Part shown: positions 1 through 63,585 of the stretch, piece by piece
Numbering within the stretch: position 1 is the stretch's first letter
How the letters are laid out: each line of letters opens with the position of its first letter
Assembly: GCF_000143415.4 (NCBI RefSeq)
Contig: NW_003314285.1
Location: forward strand, 1,329,370 to 1,393,369
DNA from: Selaginella moellendorffii
Lineage: Eukaryota; Plantae; Lycopodiophyta
Direction: 5' to 3'
DNA: 64,000 bases
Notes under the pieces: generated by a model
What the model was told of the DNA's origin: nothing
Database searches by the model: none
Seen by the model: only the letters and a program-made list of their open reading frames with translations
Position numbers and translations under genes: made by a program

Positions 1-39
1 TTGGCAGGCCCCAAGTCAGGATAAGAGGAAAAACTAATG

Positions 40-120
40 TGTTGAGAGTGGGATTCGAACCCACGCCCTTTCGGACCAGAACCTTAATCTGGTGCCTTCG
101 ACCAACTCGGCCATCTCAAC
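40..120 (-). tRNA. tRNA-Leu (anticodon AAG)
   Basis: Reverse complement reads GTTGAGATGGCCGAGTTGGTCGAAGGCACCAGATTAAGGTTCTGGTCCGAAAGGGCGTGGGTTCGAATCCCACTCTCAACA. Acceptor stem GTTGAGA/TCTCAAC, anticodon arm CCAGA-TTAAGGT-TCTGG, long variable arm, TTCGAAT T-loop, and a T5 terminator a few nt downstream. Confidence 0.96.
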
Positions 121-52760: not shown

Positions 52761-53536
52761 AAAAATGTGTATGTTAGGGTTCCAATTTACAATCACTAAT
52801 GAGCCATTTTATTTAAATTTTATTTGAGGGTGGTGATTCTTGATTATTCCTTATTATTCATCTTTTTACTGCTTTTTATTTTGATAATATAAACAACAGA
52901 GATGTTACCTTTGTGACTAAATGGAAGCAAGATCAGCGCGACCGCGACCACGTGAAATAAAGAATTTTTATTTTTTGTTCAATGGACGGGTCACTATCTG
53001 ACTGCTGCTCTGTATTGCAAACACTCGTTAAATAAAAATGCTTTTTAAGAAAATAATTTTCTTGTTGTACGCCAGGCAAAATTCACATGGAGTGATCTTC
53101 CAAAACACAGATTTTGGCGTACTCTTGGCAGTAGTCCCTCTCGTCGTTTCCACCTGGAAAAGTTTAAAGCTACACACACCTTTAGTTTCATGCAAATCGG
53201 TCAAGGGATCGATTCCCGGGTGTAAAATTTCTGTGTTGGAGGGTTTAACGATTGATGGAAGAACCGAGGAGGAGGAGAGTGCTCTCCTTTGGCGCTAGGG
53301 CGTGGAAGAAGCGCCGTCTCGTGGCTCGGCGGATTCCTCCAGGTGTTGTGCTTGTCAGTTTCGATTCAATCGCAATGTAGGCCGAGATTCCACAGTAGGA
53401 GATCCTGTGCCAGGTTCTTGGAGCTAAGCAAACGGAAATATTTCGCAAGAAGTCGATCGCGGCAGCCCGATGCGAGCGATCGCGGGATTCATCTAGCGGC
53501 AAGTAGCGGGATTTCGATGCGATTGGCAAGGAAGGG

Positions 53537-56500
53537 ATGGATTATCAGCTGTTTTGCATCAGGATCTCTGGCGGGGTATTTGGTCACGCGGTCAGCAGGG
53601 CGGAGAAGGTCTTGCGGGTTTTTGAGAGCTGCCTGTCGATCTCCAGCTTGACGACGACGCACAATGGCGCTACTGCCGCTTCTTCGTCCGTGGAATTTAT
53701 GTTTGAGAGCATCTCAAACGTTCTTCCATCTACCAAGGATGACAAGGAGCTGACATTGAATGTGCCGGATGGAAGTGGGAGGGGGTATGAAACGCTCCAC
53801 ATTTACTGCGACTCTAGATCCGAGCTCATGACAACACTTTTAAATCGGATGGACGACTTGAATGGAATCGGTACAAACTCTCCTATTCTTTTCTCGTTTG
53901 CTCTCATTGTTTCCTAAGATCGTTCGAACTTTGATTCGTTTACAGGCACGGATTTCTCTTTAAAAAAACATAGTCACGAAAGTGGAGGCTTGGTCGAGAG
54001 AGTGCTTCGTGTGCGCAGTGCTTCGATCGTGAAAATGCAAAGCAATGGTTCTCGGCATGAACGCCGGAGGGTAAGGTTTGGTCGTATATTTCAAGCGTTG
54101 GCTGCTAACATATTGAGTAAACCAGGTAAACCCCGCGAAGAAAATCAACTTCAATGATATTGTGAAAGTTCAGACAATGGCCGACGACGATCATATCGTG
54201 CTTCTACACCTTCACTCTCGGATGCTACGTCTGTCAATAACAGATGCTTCACCGTTTCTTCTTGCTTTAAGTCGAAATATGAAGGTAGTGCACTCACACT
54301 CTTCTATGTTTTGTTCTAAAAATTAGTATTTGTAGTTCTACCTCAATCGGGAGTTGGATACTGAAAAGATAACTACGAGTAAAATGGTTGACAATATAGC
54401 AGCGTATATCAAACAAGTTGTAAGTTGACTCTTTCACAGAGTTTGATTCCCTTCATGCTTTTTCTTTTCCAAGCAGAAGGCCTTACCTTTTCTGTACGAG
54501 TTCCATGTCATGAAGCAATCTGAATCCAATGCCCAGGAACGAAAGCGAAGCTTGTATATTTCTAGAGAACACTTTGTTGAAATGGCAGGAGATGAAGTTG
54601 TCGCGTTCGACTGGTATGTAATTTCGAGATTCCATATGCAAAACGTGAACCTGGTTTTTGTCGCCTGCAGCTTGAAGGATATCATCGGGCTTATTGTAAA
54701 CGACAAGAACGCAAACGAGATCGTTGTGGAGTTTAAGTCGTCACGATCAGCTCAGTATTTCTTTGAGGACAGAGAGAATTTTATTGCCAGTATTGCTGAT
54801 GTAGCTGCCACTTCTAAATCCTCGTTTTTTGACGTTCGTCCTGTACCATTTTTTCGGCTCATGTTCCCTCGCCAGGTAGTGTTTTTCTCCTCATTTCTCT
54901 GTGTGATAATCTTGTCGTGGCAGTTTGAGTATGAAGCATTATATATTAATCGTCTTATGTTGGAGTTCAATGGCAAGCGGGACCCAGCTGTTTTACACAT
55001 TACTTTGAAAGAGTTTGCGAGCAATGTGCATGTACGAAAATTCTGTGGTACAGAGTCGGTTCTCATATATTTGATTTCAGGTTGGAAAGTCTCAATGCAC
55101 CGACTACAGGGTTGTTTGTGCTGTAGCAGAGTTGCTCAAGGACTGTAAGTATCTGTTATTGGTATTGTGCGGGAAGTAACACGTTGATGATTCAGGGAGC
55201 TCATGTCAGGACTTCGTAAGATCCACAACCTGTTGTATTGTTATTTCTCGTCTTCTAGGTTCGCGAATCTGCTTTGACTCCTTGAAAAACATGTCTAGTA
55301 TCATTTTGGTCCTAATGCAGGTACAGTCCTTTTTTTATATATAAAATGTAGTAGAACTTTTCATTTGCAGTGTCTTCGCTCGGAGAACGCTGTACTTGTA
55401 TATAACGCGTTTGTAGCTTTGAAATTCGCTTTCAAATATTCTGGAGATGTTTACGCTGATCCATCTGCATTGAAGGTACTGATAAATGTGCTAAATCACG
55501 GTTACCTAACTGCTCTTACCTCTAGCAAGAACAATTCAACAAGCTCATTGTACTGAGTTTGGAAAATATGCAGCAGTTTGCTACTTGGCTGCATACGTAC
55601 TGTTTGAAAAGGGGACATCTACTTCAGGTGATTCTAATTTTTGCTAAAAAATGAAATTAACATGATCACATAAAAAATGCAGGCTTATGCTACAGTGAAA
55701 CTCTTATCTGCTGGCCTGGATAATCTAGTGCTCGAGACTGATACCTTACGAGCATGGATGAAGGTATGAAGCATGAACTCCTAACTAAACCTGAGCGCAT
55801 ATCTTTACATACTCAGGCATTTGAATCCTCTATTATGGTGGTAGGGGATGTACTGTGCGTATTGTCCAGATCGAAAAAATCAGTTCTCCGCGAAAGGTAA
55901 ATTCCCCCCCTTTTTTCTTTAATCTGTATTTTATTTACTTTTCTTATAGTACGGCAACATTGCTTGAGGCTCTTTTAGCGAAAACTTCGAGCGTTGTTTC
56001 AAGTCATTTTCGGGTACCAACGCGACAATTACATTTTTCCCTTGAGCTTTCAGATTGACATTTCTGCGCAGAGTTTGTTTCTCAAACGATGTCTAGTCAT
56101 CGTGCACCTTTACGATGCATTTTTCTCAAGAACAGACTTGACTCAATCACGAAGTGCAAGACTCCTTTTCCATACAATGGAAGGCAGTGAAGGAACAAAC
56201 CATCTTTTACGATCTTTTCTGCCTAAGGTTTATTTCCCTTTGTTCTTTCTCATAATTCAGGCCTAACGATATCGTTTGACTCAGGGTGCTTTTCAGTTTT
56301 ATGACCTCACGGCCTCTAAGTTGTTAGAAACTGGAAAGGTTTGTCTAGCATTTTCTGCATGTCAACGGAACATTCCATTGACTAAACTACAGGATAAATC
56401 TGCAAGCCACTTCTGTGCTTGGGTCAAACTTTTGGACGTTTTGAGGCGAGATACTATTGAAACCCCGTTGTTTATTTGGAATGACATGAAAAGAACAGAG

Positions 56501-59500
56501 CTTATGAAGGTAAAATTGTTTTTCCTTAAAATTTCTAAAGGGTTAATTGATCTCACATGGAATGTAGTTTCTTGAGAAAGAAATGCAAGGATTCAGTGCT
56601 GCTGCAGCCACAAATCACGTAGTTTCGTATAACCATTCTGATATAAGCTTTACTTATTCGGCTGAAAGTGAAGGACAAGGTAATAGCGGTCCTCATTTCA
56701 TTCTAACAAATATAGTTCGCATGGCAGGCACGGTCGTAGAAGGCATCCATCTTGAACTTCTAGTTGATCACTCTCCTCCTGCTGACGGTACTTATGCACC
56801 ATTTTGGAAGGTACATTTTTCTTTGCTTCTATCGAGCAAGCTTCAATTTCACCGCAGGTTCAAAGTCCCTTGGCTTTATTTCAAGCAGTATTCCAATCTC
56901 TGATTCTGGGTTTTACACCCTTTTTCGGCCACAATAATACTCCTGAAGTTGATCTCCGCCTAGCTGTGCATGTCCTGACTAAACTCTACGAGCGATATGC
57001 ACTAGAAGTAACCTTCTGCTTGCAGACATCTAACGTTATTGAGGTAAGAGAACAATTATTCTCCCAGTTTGAAAGACTTGACACTGTCTTTTAGGCATCT
57101 GTTGGAATGCTTCAAGAAGTTATGGAAACAGAGCATCAAGTATTTATTTTCAAACTAATGGTTTTCCAATTGACCTTGATGGAAATTGGAGGCCGTCAAA
57201 ATGTTCTTCGTATCCTTCGAGCTGGTGGAGCAACGGTTTTAGTGTCATTACTAGTACTATCACTTACTGAGGTAAAAATGTTGTTATTCTTTTCAAGGCT
57301 AACTTGGTACTTCATAACAGTGTTGCAAAAGTAAGACTGAGTTCGAATCAGATGGCTGGTCTTCGCAGAAATCTAGCATCCTTGAAACCGTTGAAGTTGT
57401 TGGTATGAACGGTGAACTTAAATTAGTGCGAGTCCCTTCGGGAAAAGTTCGAGAGGTTCTTGGTAAAGCCTTGCTAAATGGAAGCTTAGATGCGAAAGAG
57501 GCAATCAAATGGCAAGACTCGATAGTACCAAGTAAGATACAATTTGGTATGGTCTTGGATGTGCTGGAAGCGATCCTCAGGTAATCCAGTTTAGTTTATC
57601 GTTCGCTCACACTTTTTGTGTTTCTATACAGGCTATGCGGAAGCGACAACAGTGACATTTTTCCACCGTCTGCTGCATGCATTGCGCTCTCACGAGAGGA
57701 TGTTATGTGCCATCTGGTTCAAAGCCTTCTTCGCGCAAAGACGCCCGCCTTCGGAAGGTCAGCATGCCTTTAATTGGTTTGCGTTTGACAAGGGTTGTCT
57801 ATCTAGGATCTTGAACATTTTGTCTCACTTGACAAAAACAAGCAAGTCTTGTATGACGTCTATCGAAGAGCTCGGAACGTACGAAATAATTCTTTGGAAG
57901 CTTCTAGCCGGTGATATTGTGGACGCGGATAAGAAAATGATCATCAGTTTCTTACGCCAGACACATCTTCCGCAGGTGAAATGTCAACCTTTAAGTCTTG
58001 CTCACAAACACGGCCTGCTTATAGGTGTCCGATGTTTACCTCAACACCGACTGTTCTCCATGTGAAAACAGTAGTCTTCGTTTTTATTTACCTGATGGAT
58101 TGATCATGAAGTTGATATCGGAGGTATCTGCGAATTTAAAATCTATATTGAACTTAATCTTGTTCAGGATGCAGAAGGTTTTTTCATGCTACTCAACTCT
58201 GAGCAAAATAATCCTGAAGTCGTGTGGAATGTGACTATGGCGGAGGCACTTCTAAGTCAGTTGACATGTCATTTAGAGCCATACGTAAGAAATCGAGCGG
58301 CGGATGCTATGGCACTTTATATTCATGTCCCTGTGACTGTAGTTTATGAAGAGCTCGCTGGTAATGGTTTCGCGCTTCTTATCCTTTCTTTCATTTTTAT
58401 TAATTTGCTCTAATATATTGCAGATGCAGTTTATACTGAACCATTTTACCTTCATAACTTCCTAGATACCGAAAGATTTTCGAATTATCCAATAAATGAT
58501 CCGGTGAAATTTCTGAACAATTTGATGAAAGTAAGGCGAGGAAACCTTCCAAATTTGTACTTCTAACGAAATCTTCTTTGAACAGCACCTGAGACAACTT
58601 TCCGGCGACTTTCTGAAATCAACGTCCAATGGTATGGCAAGCTCTTTTTGGATGAAAGGGCTTTCCAAGTCACACCAACTTCTAAGCTCACTGGTAGAGA
58701 TCATTCACTTTCGAGTGCGCTTTTAGCTGCTAATGTTACGCACGGTTCTGTCAGGCGTATTTACTAGAACGTTTTCCAAAGCTGGTGCCTCCAAGTGACA
58801 TCGAAGCAGTTGCTTTAACCTTGGCAACACCAGCTGTTCGTTATCTTGCTGAATTGGAGGGTGTTGACTTGCTGATACCCGAAATTATGTTTCAAGCTAC
58901 AAAGATTCTCAGAGAAATGTGTGCCATAACTGTCAGGTACTGATGATCATGGCGTTGCATATTTACTAGTTTTTTCGTGTTCAGGGATACAGGGCCATTA
59001 ACAGGAGCTGTGGATTTTGCACTGAACATTATTTCCTTGGGAGCCGATGGATCTAGTGCCGATTACAGGGCTGATACGTTGAGCAATGTTATCACTGGGG
59101 CTTTGTCAATGCTGGAAGTAACATGTGGCTCAAGGTATAATTCACATTTTCCAGTTTTCTTACTTCTATAATTGTTTTTTATTTAGAGCTGGAAGGGATC
59201 TCCTGCGAGATGATTCACGCTGGAACAGAGGACTCTGGTGGGCACTTTGTACAGCTATCGGTGATCCTATATCATCCGTCGTACCAGCTGAATTAAATCG
59301 TATTTCGTCTGCTGCCTTGAGCTGTCTCAGGCATTTTGTTGAACAAGAGGAACTTCCCGAGTTCTTTAAAAAGGTAAGTTCGACACTTTCATTATTTCCT
59401 CGGCTTCTTAGCTGTTGTTTTGCCAGGGTTTACACCTCCCTTTGATACTCTTGACATTTTTCTCAGTAAATGAAGGTGGTAATTCTGCTATGACTTTATT

Positions 59501-62500
59501 AGCAGTAGATATCATGAGGTGTTTGGATGGCAACGAGTTCAGCTCATCACTCTTAAGACGTGTTATTCCGGAGCCTTTGCTAGTGTCTCTTACTGCACAA
59601 GAGGGAATCGAAAGACTTGCGGAAGTACGAGCATCTCATTTCGCTTTGCCAACTGCACTGTGGGACGATAGAGTTCGTGGAGAACTCCGGGAACGTTTAT
59701 ATGATCGCTTACACAACAGGAACTCTGAAGACGATGAGCTTGAATGGTTAAGACAGTTCAGCTACAATTGTCTTCGCGACGAGCTGGTCATCGATGGATT
59801 TTATATCAAGGGGTTAATCAGCTGCAATACCGACAGTATCAAGTTTCAGCTGCGGAGCTCATTACTAAATGCGCTGCTAGGCTTCATGGTGCGGCATCGT
59901 AGTGTTGCCTTGGATGGTGTCAACAGAGATACAGACAAGATCAGCGTGACAGAGTATTTATCTGTTCTATCGGCTTTCAAAGAATGCATACGATATGCTT
60001 TGAAGAAAAACATGACAGAGATGCTGACACAGTGTGACTATTCTGGTTTATCGTCACTTATTTTTCAAGGCGTCCTTGACTATCGAGTGCAAGTTGGAAT
60101 ATCTTCTGTCTGCAAGGTTTTAGTAGCAGGTGGATTGCTGGAACTAGTCTTTCAATCACAGCTCCTGGGGGCCTTGAGCTTACAGCTATGGGAAGCAAGC
60201 GCAGACGTTTCTAAGGAAGGAATGGACGATGTTCTTCGGTCTACATTGGAAGCTTTATACGTCCTCAGCGAGCAGCTACCAGCAACAACTGCAGCCACAA
60301 ACTATTTCTCGTCGCATGGAACATTTTTACCACTTATGGCCATGTTCTGCGATGTCAATCTTCCTTGCTTGCGCGGCTCGGGAGCATCAGCAAAGAACAT
60401 AAGAAGCTTTGGACACAGGTTGATGGCTGCCAAAATCTTGGGACAGCTTCTCTTGGCCGGGAAAGGTGTGACCAGGAGAGGAAAGCTGATTAAAGATTTG
60501 GAACAGCAGAAGACCAGTTCGGGTGAAGGGATCGGTCAAGCGACGGACATGTACGAACTTTTTAGCATAGTGGAGAACTGTTCTGAGGACGACCCGGCAC
60601 CCATCAGATCACTTCTGCTCCTACTTCCACTCGAGATCCTCTCTGCTCTTGCTCGAGAGCCAACTGAAGCATGCAAGACTTACGATGGTTGCGTCTTGAG
60701 CGTAAAGCTCGTCTGGGATGAATCAAGACGGCACCAGGTGAAGACGATTATAATGAAAGAAGCAGCTCGAGTACGTACTATCTATACGAATGCTGGCGGA
60801 CTTTCAGCCTGGTCTGTTGATGCGAAGCGGCCAGTGTTCTTGCGCTGGATATTGGCGGTAAATATTGAAGGCGACGAGAGGCCACTATTCAGGCATGACT
60901 TTGCTGAAGGTTATGCCCAGGAACTGTATCTTGGCGGCTATTACGTCGATCAGTTCCTTCGCGGCTACAAGCATTCCTTAGATCCCGTCTCACAAGAGCG
61001 GCTTTTACACGAACTCCGGAAGGCTTTGGTGGTTGGCTCGTCAACAGATGGTCTCTATGCGGAAGCGTTTACTTTCGATGATCGCCGGCGCGTTCTTCTT
61101 GCATTACTTATTCTTGTGAGACTTCACCCTCACCTTCTATCCAGCCGATCAAACATCGACATATTTCTTCCGCTATACGAGCTAATGAGCAACGATTTGG
61201 GGGACGAGCGAAGAGCTTTTGCGCAGCCAGCAATGCTTTTGCTTCATTGCACGGCAACTCATCCGGATATTGCAGACTGCATCATCTCCGAGGAGCTTTT
61301 ATATACGTTGGCTTCGTTTCTCTCGCTAAAAGTTCCTCCTCCGTACGCCGGTGATACTGGAACAGATCCCCGGCTGTGCAGCCTGAGTTTGCTATTAAGG
61401 TTGATGCGCTTGAGCAGCATCACCGTGGAGATAGTCATGAGAATGGGAGTGATCTCTAAGATTGAAGACTTGCTCTTGGACTTCCATGGCTCGGAACCAG
61501 TCAAGAAGAAGGCTGCGGAGTGCTTGGCCATGATGTGTGCGGACAAACGGAAGGGCGGCGAAGTTCGCTCCAGGCTTGACAAGCTTATACCTTCTAAAGT
61601 GAAAGGCTATGGTGCTTGGAAGCTACACGTGAACAGGATCCAAGACAACATAGTTGAGATGGCTTCACTCGACTATTTCTTACAGCATCGTCAGCCTTCA
61701 CCTTGGTGGACGTCAGACACTCCGGAAGGCACAGATCAGAGTTTTGAGGAAGCTGGGGCCGTTGCTGTGATTGAGGGAAGCTTATGCTTTACCAGAGCCA
61801 GAATGTCGGACTTCAACAACGAGGCCGAGATCGTCTTCATTCGAAGCATCGCGTCCACGGCTTGCGTCGAGCTGAGTGCCGTTCGGATAGTCAGAAAGCG
61901 GTTAGGCAGTGTCACTGTCGACTTTGAGGTGACTTTCCGGAAGCAGTCGCAGGAACGAGCCGAGATCAGTGCAAACTCTTTCAAGGAGATGCTTCAAGTA
62001 GCTGGCAACGATTTCTTCGCGAACACGCTGCTGGAGTCAATGGGGCCGTTGAAAGTAACGTCGATATCACTGAAGCCTGTGGATCTCTACAGGCAGAAAA
62101 GCTGGCAAAATGGATCTGCCCCGTCTGTTGGTGACAAGAACGTCATTTATGTGGCCAAAGAACAAAAGCCGGACGCATCGTCGGCTGCACAACCGGCATC
62201 TCTTCCAAGTTCGCCTCAAAGTTCGTCACCTTCTGCTCTGTCGCCATCAGTTTCATTCTCCAAGTTTTTAGTACCTTCTGCTTTGCCGCCGTCGTCACCG
62301 TCTCCAAAGGTGGAGAAAGTCTTGGTTTCACAACCGGTGACAACTGCAAGTCCATTGTCGAAGTCCATCCAGGTAGCAGTTCCTCCTCCGCCGCCGCCAC
62401 CACCACCGCCACCGCCACCGCCACCGCCAATGTCACTGCCACCACAAAAGCCTTCTATTCCACTAGCAGCTGTGAACAAAACGAGAACAAATGACGAGGA

Positions 62501-63585
62501 GCACTGCAATGTCAAGTCAGGAAACGGAGTTAATGGCCATGGTGCTCACAATGGCAACGGTCATTCGACTATGCTAAGCGGTAATGGTCATTCAACCATG
62601 GCAAATGGCAATGGTCACTCAAGCATCGGAAACGGGAAAAACCATGCTATCACGGATGGACCAGTTGTACCAGTTGAGGACGTGTTGCTAGCAATGCCAG
62701 GTAAATTTTTTATCTTTCTTTTTGCGACTTGGAAATGCTAAGTCATAAGTTTGTTGCAGAAGCGCTGCCAAGTACGAGAAATATTATGATCACGTCGGAA
62801 GAAGGAAGGTATGTCACCAAATTCAACTCAATGGCATTTTCTTATGTTTGTTTCTCTAGGCTGGTGTCCCTTGACGAAGGTCTTGAGCTGGTGCTTGAAG
62901 GCGCCGAAATCAGCAAGGAAAACAGGCGGGTGGCCAAGACAAATTTTCTTGATGCGTTCGAAGACGGTACAGTTCCTTGCACTGTGATTTGTTTCGGTAG
63001 CTAAAATCATTCTGCAGATATGGAGGAGCTTGGAAAAATTCTTGAGAAATATTCTAAGCTTGTACAAAAGTTCCCATTACAGCCACAGGTTTGCTATGAT
63101 CTAGTGGCTGCTTGGGAGGAGCATTGCCTTGATCTTATGACCACGGACGAGCTGGTTTGTAATGCTTTTCAAATTTGTGCGTCTGATTATACACTTGTTT
63201 ACAGGCTAGATATGGCCGTTCCATCGCTTCATATGACATCTGCCGCACCGATAATCCTGAGGTCGCAATACAAGAAGCAAAGCGAAAGTTCCAAGGCCTC
63301 CTGAAACTTCGAAGGCAAGTGCTTCAACTTTAATCTTCTTGCTTTTCTCTAACTGCATCGATTAGAGAGCAAGAATGGAAGGAAAAATCAAAGCAGTTGA
63401 AAGGAGACATGTCGGCGGAGCTAGCGAGGGCTGTTGGCGAGCGCAAGGTTCTTTTACATCGCTGTTTGAGTTTTGTGGTCTCAAAATTTTTATTCTGGCA
63501 GGAGAGACTGAGCGCAGACGTTGCAAAAGATGAACTCAAGGCAATGTCGAAGGGCAAAATCCAGAGGAAGAAGAAACAAAGTTGA
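53537..63585 (+). CDS. Highly divergent RME-8/DNAJC13 (GRV2/KAM2)-like protein apparently lacking the J-domain, with a C-terminal extension (many short introns)
   Basis: N-terminal PH-like block ELTLNVPDGSGRGYETLHIYCDSRSELMT. IWN-type repeats ETPLFIWNDMKRTEL, NPEVVWN, TALWDDRVRGEL and KLVWDE. Also VVYEELADAVYTEPFYLHNFLDTERFSNYPINDPVKFL, FSYNCLRDELVIDGFYIK and ELYLGGYYVDQFL, all collinear with RME-8. Confidence 0.8.

What the first reader, a model, noticed from the sequence alone, without database searches (positions are those of the whole stretch)
53537..61700. Divergent RME-8/DNAJC13 paralog that appears to have lost the J-domain
Seen: motifs collinear with RME-8 from the N-terminal PH-like repeats through four IWN-type repeats to the last ARM region. 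After ..YPINDPVKFLNNLMK, where RME-8 has its DnaJ domain (AYxxL..YHPDKNP), my splice model gives only HLRQLSGDFLKSTSNGMASSFWMKGLSKSHQLLSSLVEIIHFR-AYLLERFP (58586-58785), with no HPD motif. The lipid-binding KHSWRGxY motif is also replaced (RISGGVFG) and the GYF-like segment (~57380-57530) is degenerate. Established: canonical RME-8/GRV2 is usually single-copy, well conserved, binds PI3P and recruits Hsc70 through HPD. Inference: a second, Hsp70-independent RME-8-like scaffold with intact long ORFs, possibly an undescribed subfamily restricted to early-diverging (flagellate-sperm) plants. This is the best candidate for a new system in the window.
Basis: partly seen in the sequence, partly recalled or inferred. 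Interest (0 to 1): 0.82.

Follow-up and report, generated by a model that had tools for sequence, protein, structure and literature searches.

The report
RME-8-like gene without J-domain
This spikemoss gene makes a very large relative of the endosome-sorting protein RME-8/DNAJC13 that lacks the chaperone-recruiting J-domain. It belongs to an old family, apparently undescribed, found from stonewort-type green algae up to conifers but not in flowering plants.

Summary
Window 53537-63585 (+) is Selaginella moellendorffii gene SELMODRAFT_414652. It has 38 exons, 44-75 nt GT-AG introns, and encodes about 2693 aa. Spliced RNA contigs from four studies join exon 58424-58530 to 58586-58693 to 58755-58936. 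A 36-residue linker therefore sits where RME-8 carries its J-domain, and no J-type HPD exists in any frame of the window.

A profile comparison shows the protein is collinear with canonical RME-8 over about 1900 columns (E 3e-68). All four IWN repeats are present and the J-domain appears as a clean gap. The PI3P-binding KHSWRGKY motif and the GYF_2 signature are also missing.

This is a family trait. About 30 relatives carry RME-8_N and no DnaJ: Chara, Coleochaete, Spirogloea, Closterium, liverworts, mosses, ferns, Taxus and Cryptomeria. They form one clade that follows the species tree. No flowering-plant member was seen. The family occurs in plants without flagellate sperm, so that part of the reading fails.

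I could not test whether Selaginella also has a canonical GRV2. I found no paper on the family. Function (Hsp70-independent endosomal scaffold, possibly WASH-linked) is inferred. Variants in RNA contigs (17 nonsynonymous, 6 synonymous) suggest weak constraint in Selaginella.

The parts
53537..63585 (+). Whole gene SELMODRAFT_414652: 38 exons, about 2693 codons, introns of 44-75 nt, all GT-AG
   Evidence: Exons 1-32 fit the joints and record lengths of the RNA contigs. The last six exons are inferred from homology. The annotated gene has the same ends. The window is 100% identical to GL377589.1.
53552..53626 (+). Position of the PH-like-1 lipid-binding motif. It reads FCIRISGGVFGHAVSRAEKVLRVFE instead of F-x-x-TKHSWRGKYKRI.
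   Evidence: N-terminal alignments. The Trp equivalent to human W20 is absent in all J-less members shown. K17/W20/R26 are the PI3P contacts in DNAJC13 (PMC13618431).
53963..54046 (+). PH-like-2 motif KKHS...RVRSASIVKM, nearly invariant in the family. It may be a retained basic pocket.
   Evidence: Invariant columns in A2 and the alignment. Equivalence to the InsP6 site of DNAJC13 was not tested residue by residue.
56456..56573 (+). IWN1 (ETPLFIWNDMKRTEL), spanning intron 56510-56567
57375..57542 (+). Degenerate GYF-like segment
   Evidence: It lies at the position of canonical GYF_2 with low hhalign confidence. No family member matches PF14237.
58204..58263 (+). IWN2 (NNPEVVWNVTMAEALL)
   Evidence: Aligned to canonical IWN2 with confidence 9. 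This lies in the block best conserved with canonical RME-8, model residues 1001-1200.
58333..58530 (+). Conserved flank just before the J-domain site (YEEL...FYLHNFLDTERFSNYPINDPVKFLNNLMK), spanning intron 58361-58423
   Evidence: hhalign; RNA joints
58586..58693 (+). Exon 28: a 36-residue linker standing where canonical RME-8 has its J-domain of about 75 residues. Flanked by introns 58531-58585 and 58694-58754.
   Evidence: RNA contigs of X1, X2, X5 and X7. The J-domain of P0079 falls in gaps opposite model residues 1206-1230. The same short linker is seen in Taxus and in the family consensus.
59643..59702 (+). IWN3 (LPTALWDDRVRGEL)
60693..60752 (+). IWN4 (VKLVWDESRRHQV)
61710..62090 (+). Extra domain after the RME-8-like core (which ends at PSPWW, 61695-61715). 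Predicted beta-alpha-beta-beta-alpha-beta fold, ferredoxin/SEA-like.
   Evidence: Conserved in liverworts, mosses and three unnamed assemblies. AlphaFold pLDDT 75. Only weak Foldseek hits, best E 0.007, to SEA-like ectodomains and other ferredoxin-like folds.
62382..62429 (+). Run of 16 prolines inside a long low-complexity tract. The GenBank model splices it out.
   Evidence: No RNA was laid here.
62700..63585 (+). Conserved C-terminal helical domain on six small exons (62760-62808, 62860-62966, 63018-63154, 63205-63318, 63370-63447, 63502-63585), shared with liverwort and moss long forms
   Evidence: tblastn of Marchantia, Calypogeia and Physcomitrium tails. Models. Alignment A4. No Pfam, PDB-sequence or fold match. 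RefSeq calls this end a separate 279-aa gene, LOC9658395.

Best explanation
This is an intact, expressed gene of Selaginella moellendorffii for a paralogue of RME-8/DNAJC13/GRV2 that lacks the J-domain. It belongs to a family that arose no later than the common ancestor of Charophyceae, Coleochaetophyceae, Zygnematophyceae and land plants. The family has been kept in bryophytes, lycophytes, ferns and gymnosperms and was not seen in flowering plants.

Shown here: the protein keeps the RME-8 scaffold, namely three PH-like modules, four IWN repeats and the ARM solenoids. The J-domain is excised to a linker of 25-40 residues. The PI3P-contacting Trp motif of PH-like-1 and the GYF_2 signature are lost.

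Inferred: it cannot switch on Hsp70, so it acts as a chaperone-independent scaffold or regulator on endosomal membranes. In canonical RME-8 the J-domain holds back SNX-1 binding and endosome localisation. A J-less form would therefore be a constitutively 'open' binder of RME-8 partners (sorting nexin/retromer, WASH-type partners), or a partner or competitor of canonical GRV2 through the conserved IWN1-ARM2 dimer region. Membrane targeting probably depends on something other than the classical PH-like-1 PI3P pocket. In Selaginella, liverworts and some mosses the scaffold carries an extra tail: a ferredoxin-like domain, poly-proline, and a novel helical domain.
For: Gene and splicing. No J-domain. 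Family membership by Pfam RME-8_N, with DnaJ absent in all members scanned. Collinearity with canonical RME-8. Family range and monophyly. Loss of the PHL1 motif across the family. Role of the J-domain in canonical RME-8: the J-domain and its HPD oppose endosome localisation (PMC12404652); the J-domain inhibits SNX-1 binding (PMC9642905); the protein dimerises through IWN1/ARM2 and this recruits WASH (PMC13618431).
Against: No functional or localisation data exist for any member. Variants in RNA contigs are 17 nonsynonymous to 6 synonymous, and the Selaginella branch is 4-5 times longer than its relatives' branches. The Selaginella copy may therefore be under relaxed constraint. A canonical GRV2 in the same genome was not shown. 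The last six exons and the join to the C-terminal domain rest on homology only, and RefSeq splits them off. Absence from flowering plants rests on searches of clustered databases, not on genome-by-genome searches.
Confidence: 0.8

Rival explanations
1. The Selaginella copy is a decaying gene: a transcribed pseudogene in the making, with no function left even if the family is functional elsewhere.
For: The nonsynonymous to synonymous ratio among 23 RNA-contig variants is 17:6, close to neutral. The terminal branch is 0.7, against 0.1-0.2 for most relatives. The N-terminal motifs are more degenerate than in other members.
Against: 2693 codons are open across 38 exons with every intron GT-AG. The gene is correctly spliced in contigs of 4 runs from 4 studies, with no insertions or deletions. 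Identity to Marchantia is 49% over 2122 columns. The 23 variants are a small sample.
Confidence: 0.08
2. It is the only RME-8 of Selaginella: an orthologue that lost its J-domain, not a second copy.
For: I could not retrieve a canonical GRV2 from this genome. The scan's notes hold no RME-8/DNAJC13/GRV2 entry for it.
Against: The J-less clade is old, predating land plants, and is separate from canonical RME-8. Flowering plants keep a canonical J-bearing GRV2. Both lines must therefore have passed through the vascular-plant ancestor. Selaginella would need a separate, later loss of the canonical gene.
Confidence: 0.12
3. The missing J-domain is an artefact of gene modelling or assembly.
For: The GenBank model omits eight segments (6-48 aa) that my model codes, of which only those at model residues 843-877 and 886-899 were checked against RNA joints, so models of this locus are error-prone.
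Against: RNA contigs span the site. No frame holds a J-type HPD. Thirty-one relatives from independent assemblies and transcriptomes show the same gap.
Confidence: 0.01

Closest known systems
RME-8 / DNAJC13 / Arabidopsis GRV2 (KAM2, SGR8)
   Same: Same overall build and order: N-terminal PH-like modules (Pfam RME-8_N), IWN1, ARM, GYF position, IWN2, [J site], ARM, IWN3, IWN4, ARM. The profile-profile match covers about 1900 columns. The strongest conservation lies in IWN2 and the flank just before the J site.
   Different: No J-domain or HPD. No KHSW(R/K)GKY motif in PH-like-1. No GYF_2 match. Sequence identity is only about 15-18% at profile level. A C-terminal extension is present in Selaginella, liverworts and some mosses. 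The last-exon half finds no canonical RME-8 by phmmer among 1.84 billion representatives.
Engineered DNAJC13 and RME-8 mutants without a working J-domain (HPD mutants, J-domain deletions)
   Same: They keep the scaffold but cannot engage Hsc70. These mutants bind PI3P and endosomes more strongly, and bind SNX-1 better (PMC12404652; PMC9642905).
   Different: Those are laboratory constructs that keep the PI3P pocket. The natural family has also lost the PH-like-1 Trp motif, so stronger PI3P binding cannot simply be assumed.
Plant genes kept up to gymnosperms and lost in flowering plants, notably WASH
   Same: Kollmar et al. report WASH in Physcomitrella, Selaginella, Picea, Pinus and Cycas, but only pseudogene fragments or nothing in flowering plants (PMC3298513). 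That is the same broad pattern as this family. In animals DNAJC13 works with the WASH complex.
   Different: The co-distribution rests on what may be a single shared loss on the flowering-plant stem. No physical or genetic link between this family and plant WASH has been tested.

Membership tests
RME-8/DNAJC13 family | RME-8 N-terminal region (Pfam PF19432) above the curated cut-off | tested here: met
   P0069 scores 76.4 bits against 25.4. Relatives score 55-161 bits. Single exons of the window give only weak hits.
RME-8/DNAJC13 family | Four IWN repeats in the canonical order. Norris et al. say they are found in all RME-8 homologues and in no other proteins. | tested here: met
   FIWN, VVWN, LWDD and VWDE at model residues 689, 1123, 1491 and 1842, each aligned to the canonical repeat. 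IWN3 and IWN4 have D in place of N.
RME-8/DNAJC13 family | Central J-domain with an HPD triad | tested here: not met
   No DnaJ Pfam hit. The J-domain columns are a gap. No J-type HPD occurs in the window or in 31 relatives. RNA spans the site.
RME-8/DNAJC13 family | PH-like-1 PI3P pocket (human K17, W20, R26) | tested here: not met
   The Trp is absent in every J-less member aligned. The basic residues are only partly kept (residues). Lipid binding itself is not testable here.
RME-8/DNAJC13 family | GYF_2 domain (PF14237) between IWN1 and IWN2 | tested here: not met
   It is present in most of the canonical proteins retrieved and absent in all J-less ones. Only a low-confidence alignment exists at that position.
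RME-8/DNAJC13 family | Full-length collinearity with canonical members | tested here: met
   hhalign probability 100, E 3.4e-68, 1913 columns
J-domain proteins (Hsp40 co-chaperones) | A J-domain able to stimulate Hsp70 | tested here: not met
   As above. The database names 'DnaJ homolog subfamily C member 13' given to some members are misnomers in this respect.
J-less streptophyte RME-8-like clade (defined here) | Groups with the Chara-to-gymnosperm clade, apart from canonical RME-8, and shares the short linker at the J site | tested here: met
   The clade has SH-aLRT 100 and a stem length of 1.38. Selaginella falls among the land-plant members. The linker is shared with the family.

The most novel reading that the evidence does not exclude
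The J-less RME-8 family is the plant partner of the WASH-type endosomal actin machinery. On this reading it is a chaperone-free scaffold that recruits or organises WASH/retromer sorting domains. In the long forms the poly-proline tract and the unassigned C-terminal domain would couple it to actin regulators. It would have been discarded together with WASH when the flowering-plant lineage rebuilt its endosomal recycling. That would make it a natural separation of RME-8's scaffold function from its Hsc70 function.
Probability: 0.2. Interest if true: 0.75.

Novelty: new variant of a known kind. Interest (0 to 1): 0.55.

Why it matters
RME-8/DNAJC13 is usually explained through its J-domain: it brings Hsc70 to endosomes to strip clathrin, ESCRT-0 or sorting nexins. 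Here a whole family has kept the giant scaffold, with its IWN repeats, since before land plants arose, while dropping the J-domain and the classical PI3P motif. That argues the scaffold has a chaperone-independent job.

The family offers natural material, in tractable models such as Marchantia and Physcomitrium, for separating the two functions. It adds one more endomembrane component lost on the way to flowering plants, with the same broad pattern as WASH. It also flags a misleading automatic name ('DnaJ homolog subfamily C member 13') on proteins that are not J-proteins.

Tried and rejected
- PDB sequence searches with the last exon, with a canonical N-terminus and with the C-terminal domain profile found nothing usable. 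I therefore could not map human DNAJC13 InsP6 or dimer-interface residues one to one.
- The third word-based protein search, using canonical Prototheca RME-8, returned only 16 algal and unnamed hits and no land-plant GRV2. The canonical copy of Selaginella therefore stayed untested.
- The ESM Atlas feature search gave only generic ARM/BTB clusters.
- Brute-force enumeration of splice chains was ambiguous, with 202 solutions. I replaced it with a homology-scored dynamic programme constrained by RNA record lengths.
- Fold searches for the C-terminal helical domain gave nothing: Foldseek best E 0.29, VIA best Z 4.7. The ferredoxin-like domain gave no convincing match either, best E 0.007.
- The idea that the family tracks flagellate sperm was rejected, because it occurs in conifers and Zygnematophyceae.
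- A J-domain encoded as a separate nearby gene was rejected: no other HPD lies in open reading frame anywhere in the window.
- One literature search was badly framed and returned only moss papers.
Full report
**What is there**

The ORF list showed many short open frames on the + strand from 53537 onwards, followed by one 1108-aa ORF at 59415-62741. Exon pieces gave only weak Pfam RME-8_N hits.

The long ORF found relatives at 40-44% identity. One of them is Taxus chinensis KI387_038090, which carries RME-8_N. Its tblastn alignment is collinear over window 55460-61718. Taxus already shows the same short stretch in place of a J-domain.

The window is 100% identical to Selaginella moellendorffii scaffold GL377589.1 of GCA_000143415.2. 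The annotated gene SELMODRAFT_414652 (P0069) spans exactly 53537-63585.

**Transcripts and gene model**

Twenty public runs from eight studies hold 0.14-0.63 of the stretch's sampled words, 14 of them half or more, as expected for RNA without introns. I laid contigs of four runs from four studies on 53500-59480. They gave GT..AG joints that skip 44-63 bases.

After shifting each cut to its GT-AG, exons from 56393 onwards read as one open frame. The 5' half was solved with a dynamic programme. It was constrained by the exon lengths that the RNA record implies and scored with 15 homologues.

The result is 32 exons up to 62700. Six further small exons, inferred from homology with liverwort and moss proteins, end at the stop codon at 63583-63585. 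In total there are 38 exons, 2693 codons and introns of 44-75 nt, all GT-AG.

The GenBank model is a subset of this model and lacks eight segments. RefSeq annotates the 3' end as a separate 279-aa gene. I had no RNA laid on that part.

**The J-domain site**

RNA joins 58530 to 58586 and 58693 to 58755. Contigs of two of the four runs (X1, X7) carry a synonymous CAT for CAC at the start of that exon.

The mRNA reads FLNNLMK-HLRQLSGDFLKSTSNGMASSFWMKGLSKSHQLLSSL-AYLLERFP.

The only HPD tripeptide in any + frame of 53000-63000, and the only one in open reading frame on either strand of the window, is at 61260. It lies in an ARM repeat and is not conserved in Taxus.

**Relation to canonical RME-8**

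I aligned 16 family members (A2) and 12 canonical proteins that carry RME-8_N, nearly all with DnaJ and most with GYF_2 (A3). The profile comparison gives probability 100, E 3.4e-68 and 1913 aligned columns.

With the Selaginella model as master, the flanks of the J site align at top confidence. These are YPEL...FYL.NL.D..RFP.Y.I.D before the site and WR...RI.LLL.AQ..L..R after it. The canonical AYRKLA..YHPD.NP..R..F helix-hairpin falls in gaps opposite model residues 1206-1230.

All four IWN repeats align. The block best conserved with canonical RME-8 is model residues 1001-1200.

At the N-terminus, canonical proteins have F-x-x-TKHSW(R/K)GKY(K/R)RI. The family has FLVR-x(5-9)-RG-x-x-R(I/L)L with no Trp, and Selaginella is the most degenerate. 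Human K17, W20 and R26 are the PI3P contacts (PMC13618431). A KKHS...RVRS motif in the second PH-like module is nearly invariant in the family. I could not map it to the InsP6 site for lack of a human sequence.

**The family**

An exhaustive HMMER search with the last exon against 1.84 billion representatives gave only 31 hits, none of them a canonical RME-8. A profile search gave 25 full or near-full members, all with RME-8_N as the only Pfam family. My own scans agree.

Named sources:
- Charophyte algae: Chara braunii, Coleochaete scutata, Spirogloea muscicola, Closterium.
- Liverworts: Marchantia, Calypogeia.
- Mosses: Physcomitrium, Ceratodon, Sphagnum.
- Ferns: Ceratopteris (two loci), Adiantum, Pteridium.
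- Conifers: Cryptomeria, Taxus.
- Selaginella itself.

None of 31 members has a J-type HPD. In a maximum-likelihood tree built with the quick method, the family is one clade (SH-aLRT 100, stem 1.38). Its inner branching follows the species tree. Canonical Mesostigma groups with canonical chlorophytes.

No named flowering-plant protein appeared in any search. The small unnamed fragments I looked up were from metagenomes or Selaginella itself.

**Extra tail**

In Selaginella, liverworts and some mosses the RME-8-like core (ending at PSPWW, 61695-61715) is followed by three elements:
- A conserved domain of about 125 residues with a predicted beta-alpha-beta-beta-alpha-beta fold. pLDDT is 75, with only weak SEA-like or ferredoxin-like matches.
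- A long low-complexity tract with poly-proline.
- A conserved helical domain of about 170 residues with no Pfam, PDB or fold match.

A moss transcript contig (P0059) carries core and tail together.

**How it may work**

This part is inferred. Without a J-domain the protein cannot stimulate Hsp70.

In canonical RME-8 the J-domain and its HPD oppose endosomal localisation and PI3P binding (PMC12404652). The J-domain also competes with SNX-1 for the C-terminal IWN3-IWN4 region (PMC9642905). DNAJC13 dimerises through IWN1 and ARM2, and this is needed to recruit WASH (PMC13618431).

A natural J-less form that keeps these regions is most simply a chaperone-free scaffold, or a partner or competitor of GRV2.

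WASH itself is reported in Physcomitrella, Selaginella and gymnosperms but only as pseudogene fragments or not at all in flowering plants (PMC3298513). That matches the range of this family. It is a lead, not a test.

**Cautions**

- Of 23 variants between the window and the RNA contigs, 17 change the residue and 6 do not. The Selaginella branch is also long. Constraint may therefore be relaxed in this species.
- I could not show a canonical GRV2 in this genome.
- Six literature searches found no paper on a J-less RME-8 paralogue. The one broad evolutionary survey of RME-8 that I read does not mention one. The library does not cover all journals.

Noticed in passing
window 53537-63585 (GenBank model P0069; RefSeq XP_024535007.1): The public annotations of this locus disagree. 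The GenBank model omits eight segments that my model codes (6-48 aa each). Only the two at model residues 843-877 and 886-899 were checked against RNA joints. RefSeq calls the 3' end (from about 62430) a separate 279-aa gene, LOC9658395.
   Followed up: partly
window 61710-62090: A ferredoxin/SEA-like domain of about 125 residues sits in a presumably cytosolic protein. It is conserved in liverworts, mosses and Selaginella and has no family assignment.
   Followed up: partly
window 62760-63585: A conserved C-terminal helical domain (LVLEGA...EELGRM.EKYPKLVQK.ALQPQLCYDLMC.WEE.CLDL...) has no Pfam, PDB or fold match. In Marchantia and Calypogeia it is preceded by formin-like PPPPPPPGG(A/L)SRGPPPPP repeats.
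   Followed up: partly
L002:501-8324 (P0073, GCA_977009335.1, organism not known): A 2607-aa, intronless, Ala-rich RME-8-like protein also has no DnaJ match. Its one HPD is not in a J context. It sits on a very long branch next to the streptophyte J-less clade, so J-domain loss may have happened in another lineage too, or the placement is long-branch attraction.
   Followed up: partly
window 39-120 (-) and 17597-17669 (+): tRNA-Leu(AAG) and tRNA-Trp(CCA) genes.
   Followed up: no
L001:13651-15154 (just beyond the window's end): The next gene downstream is a Lipase_3 gene, followed by a PDCD2_C/zf-MYND gene. There is no sign of a functional cluster.
   Followed up: no
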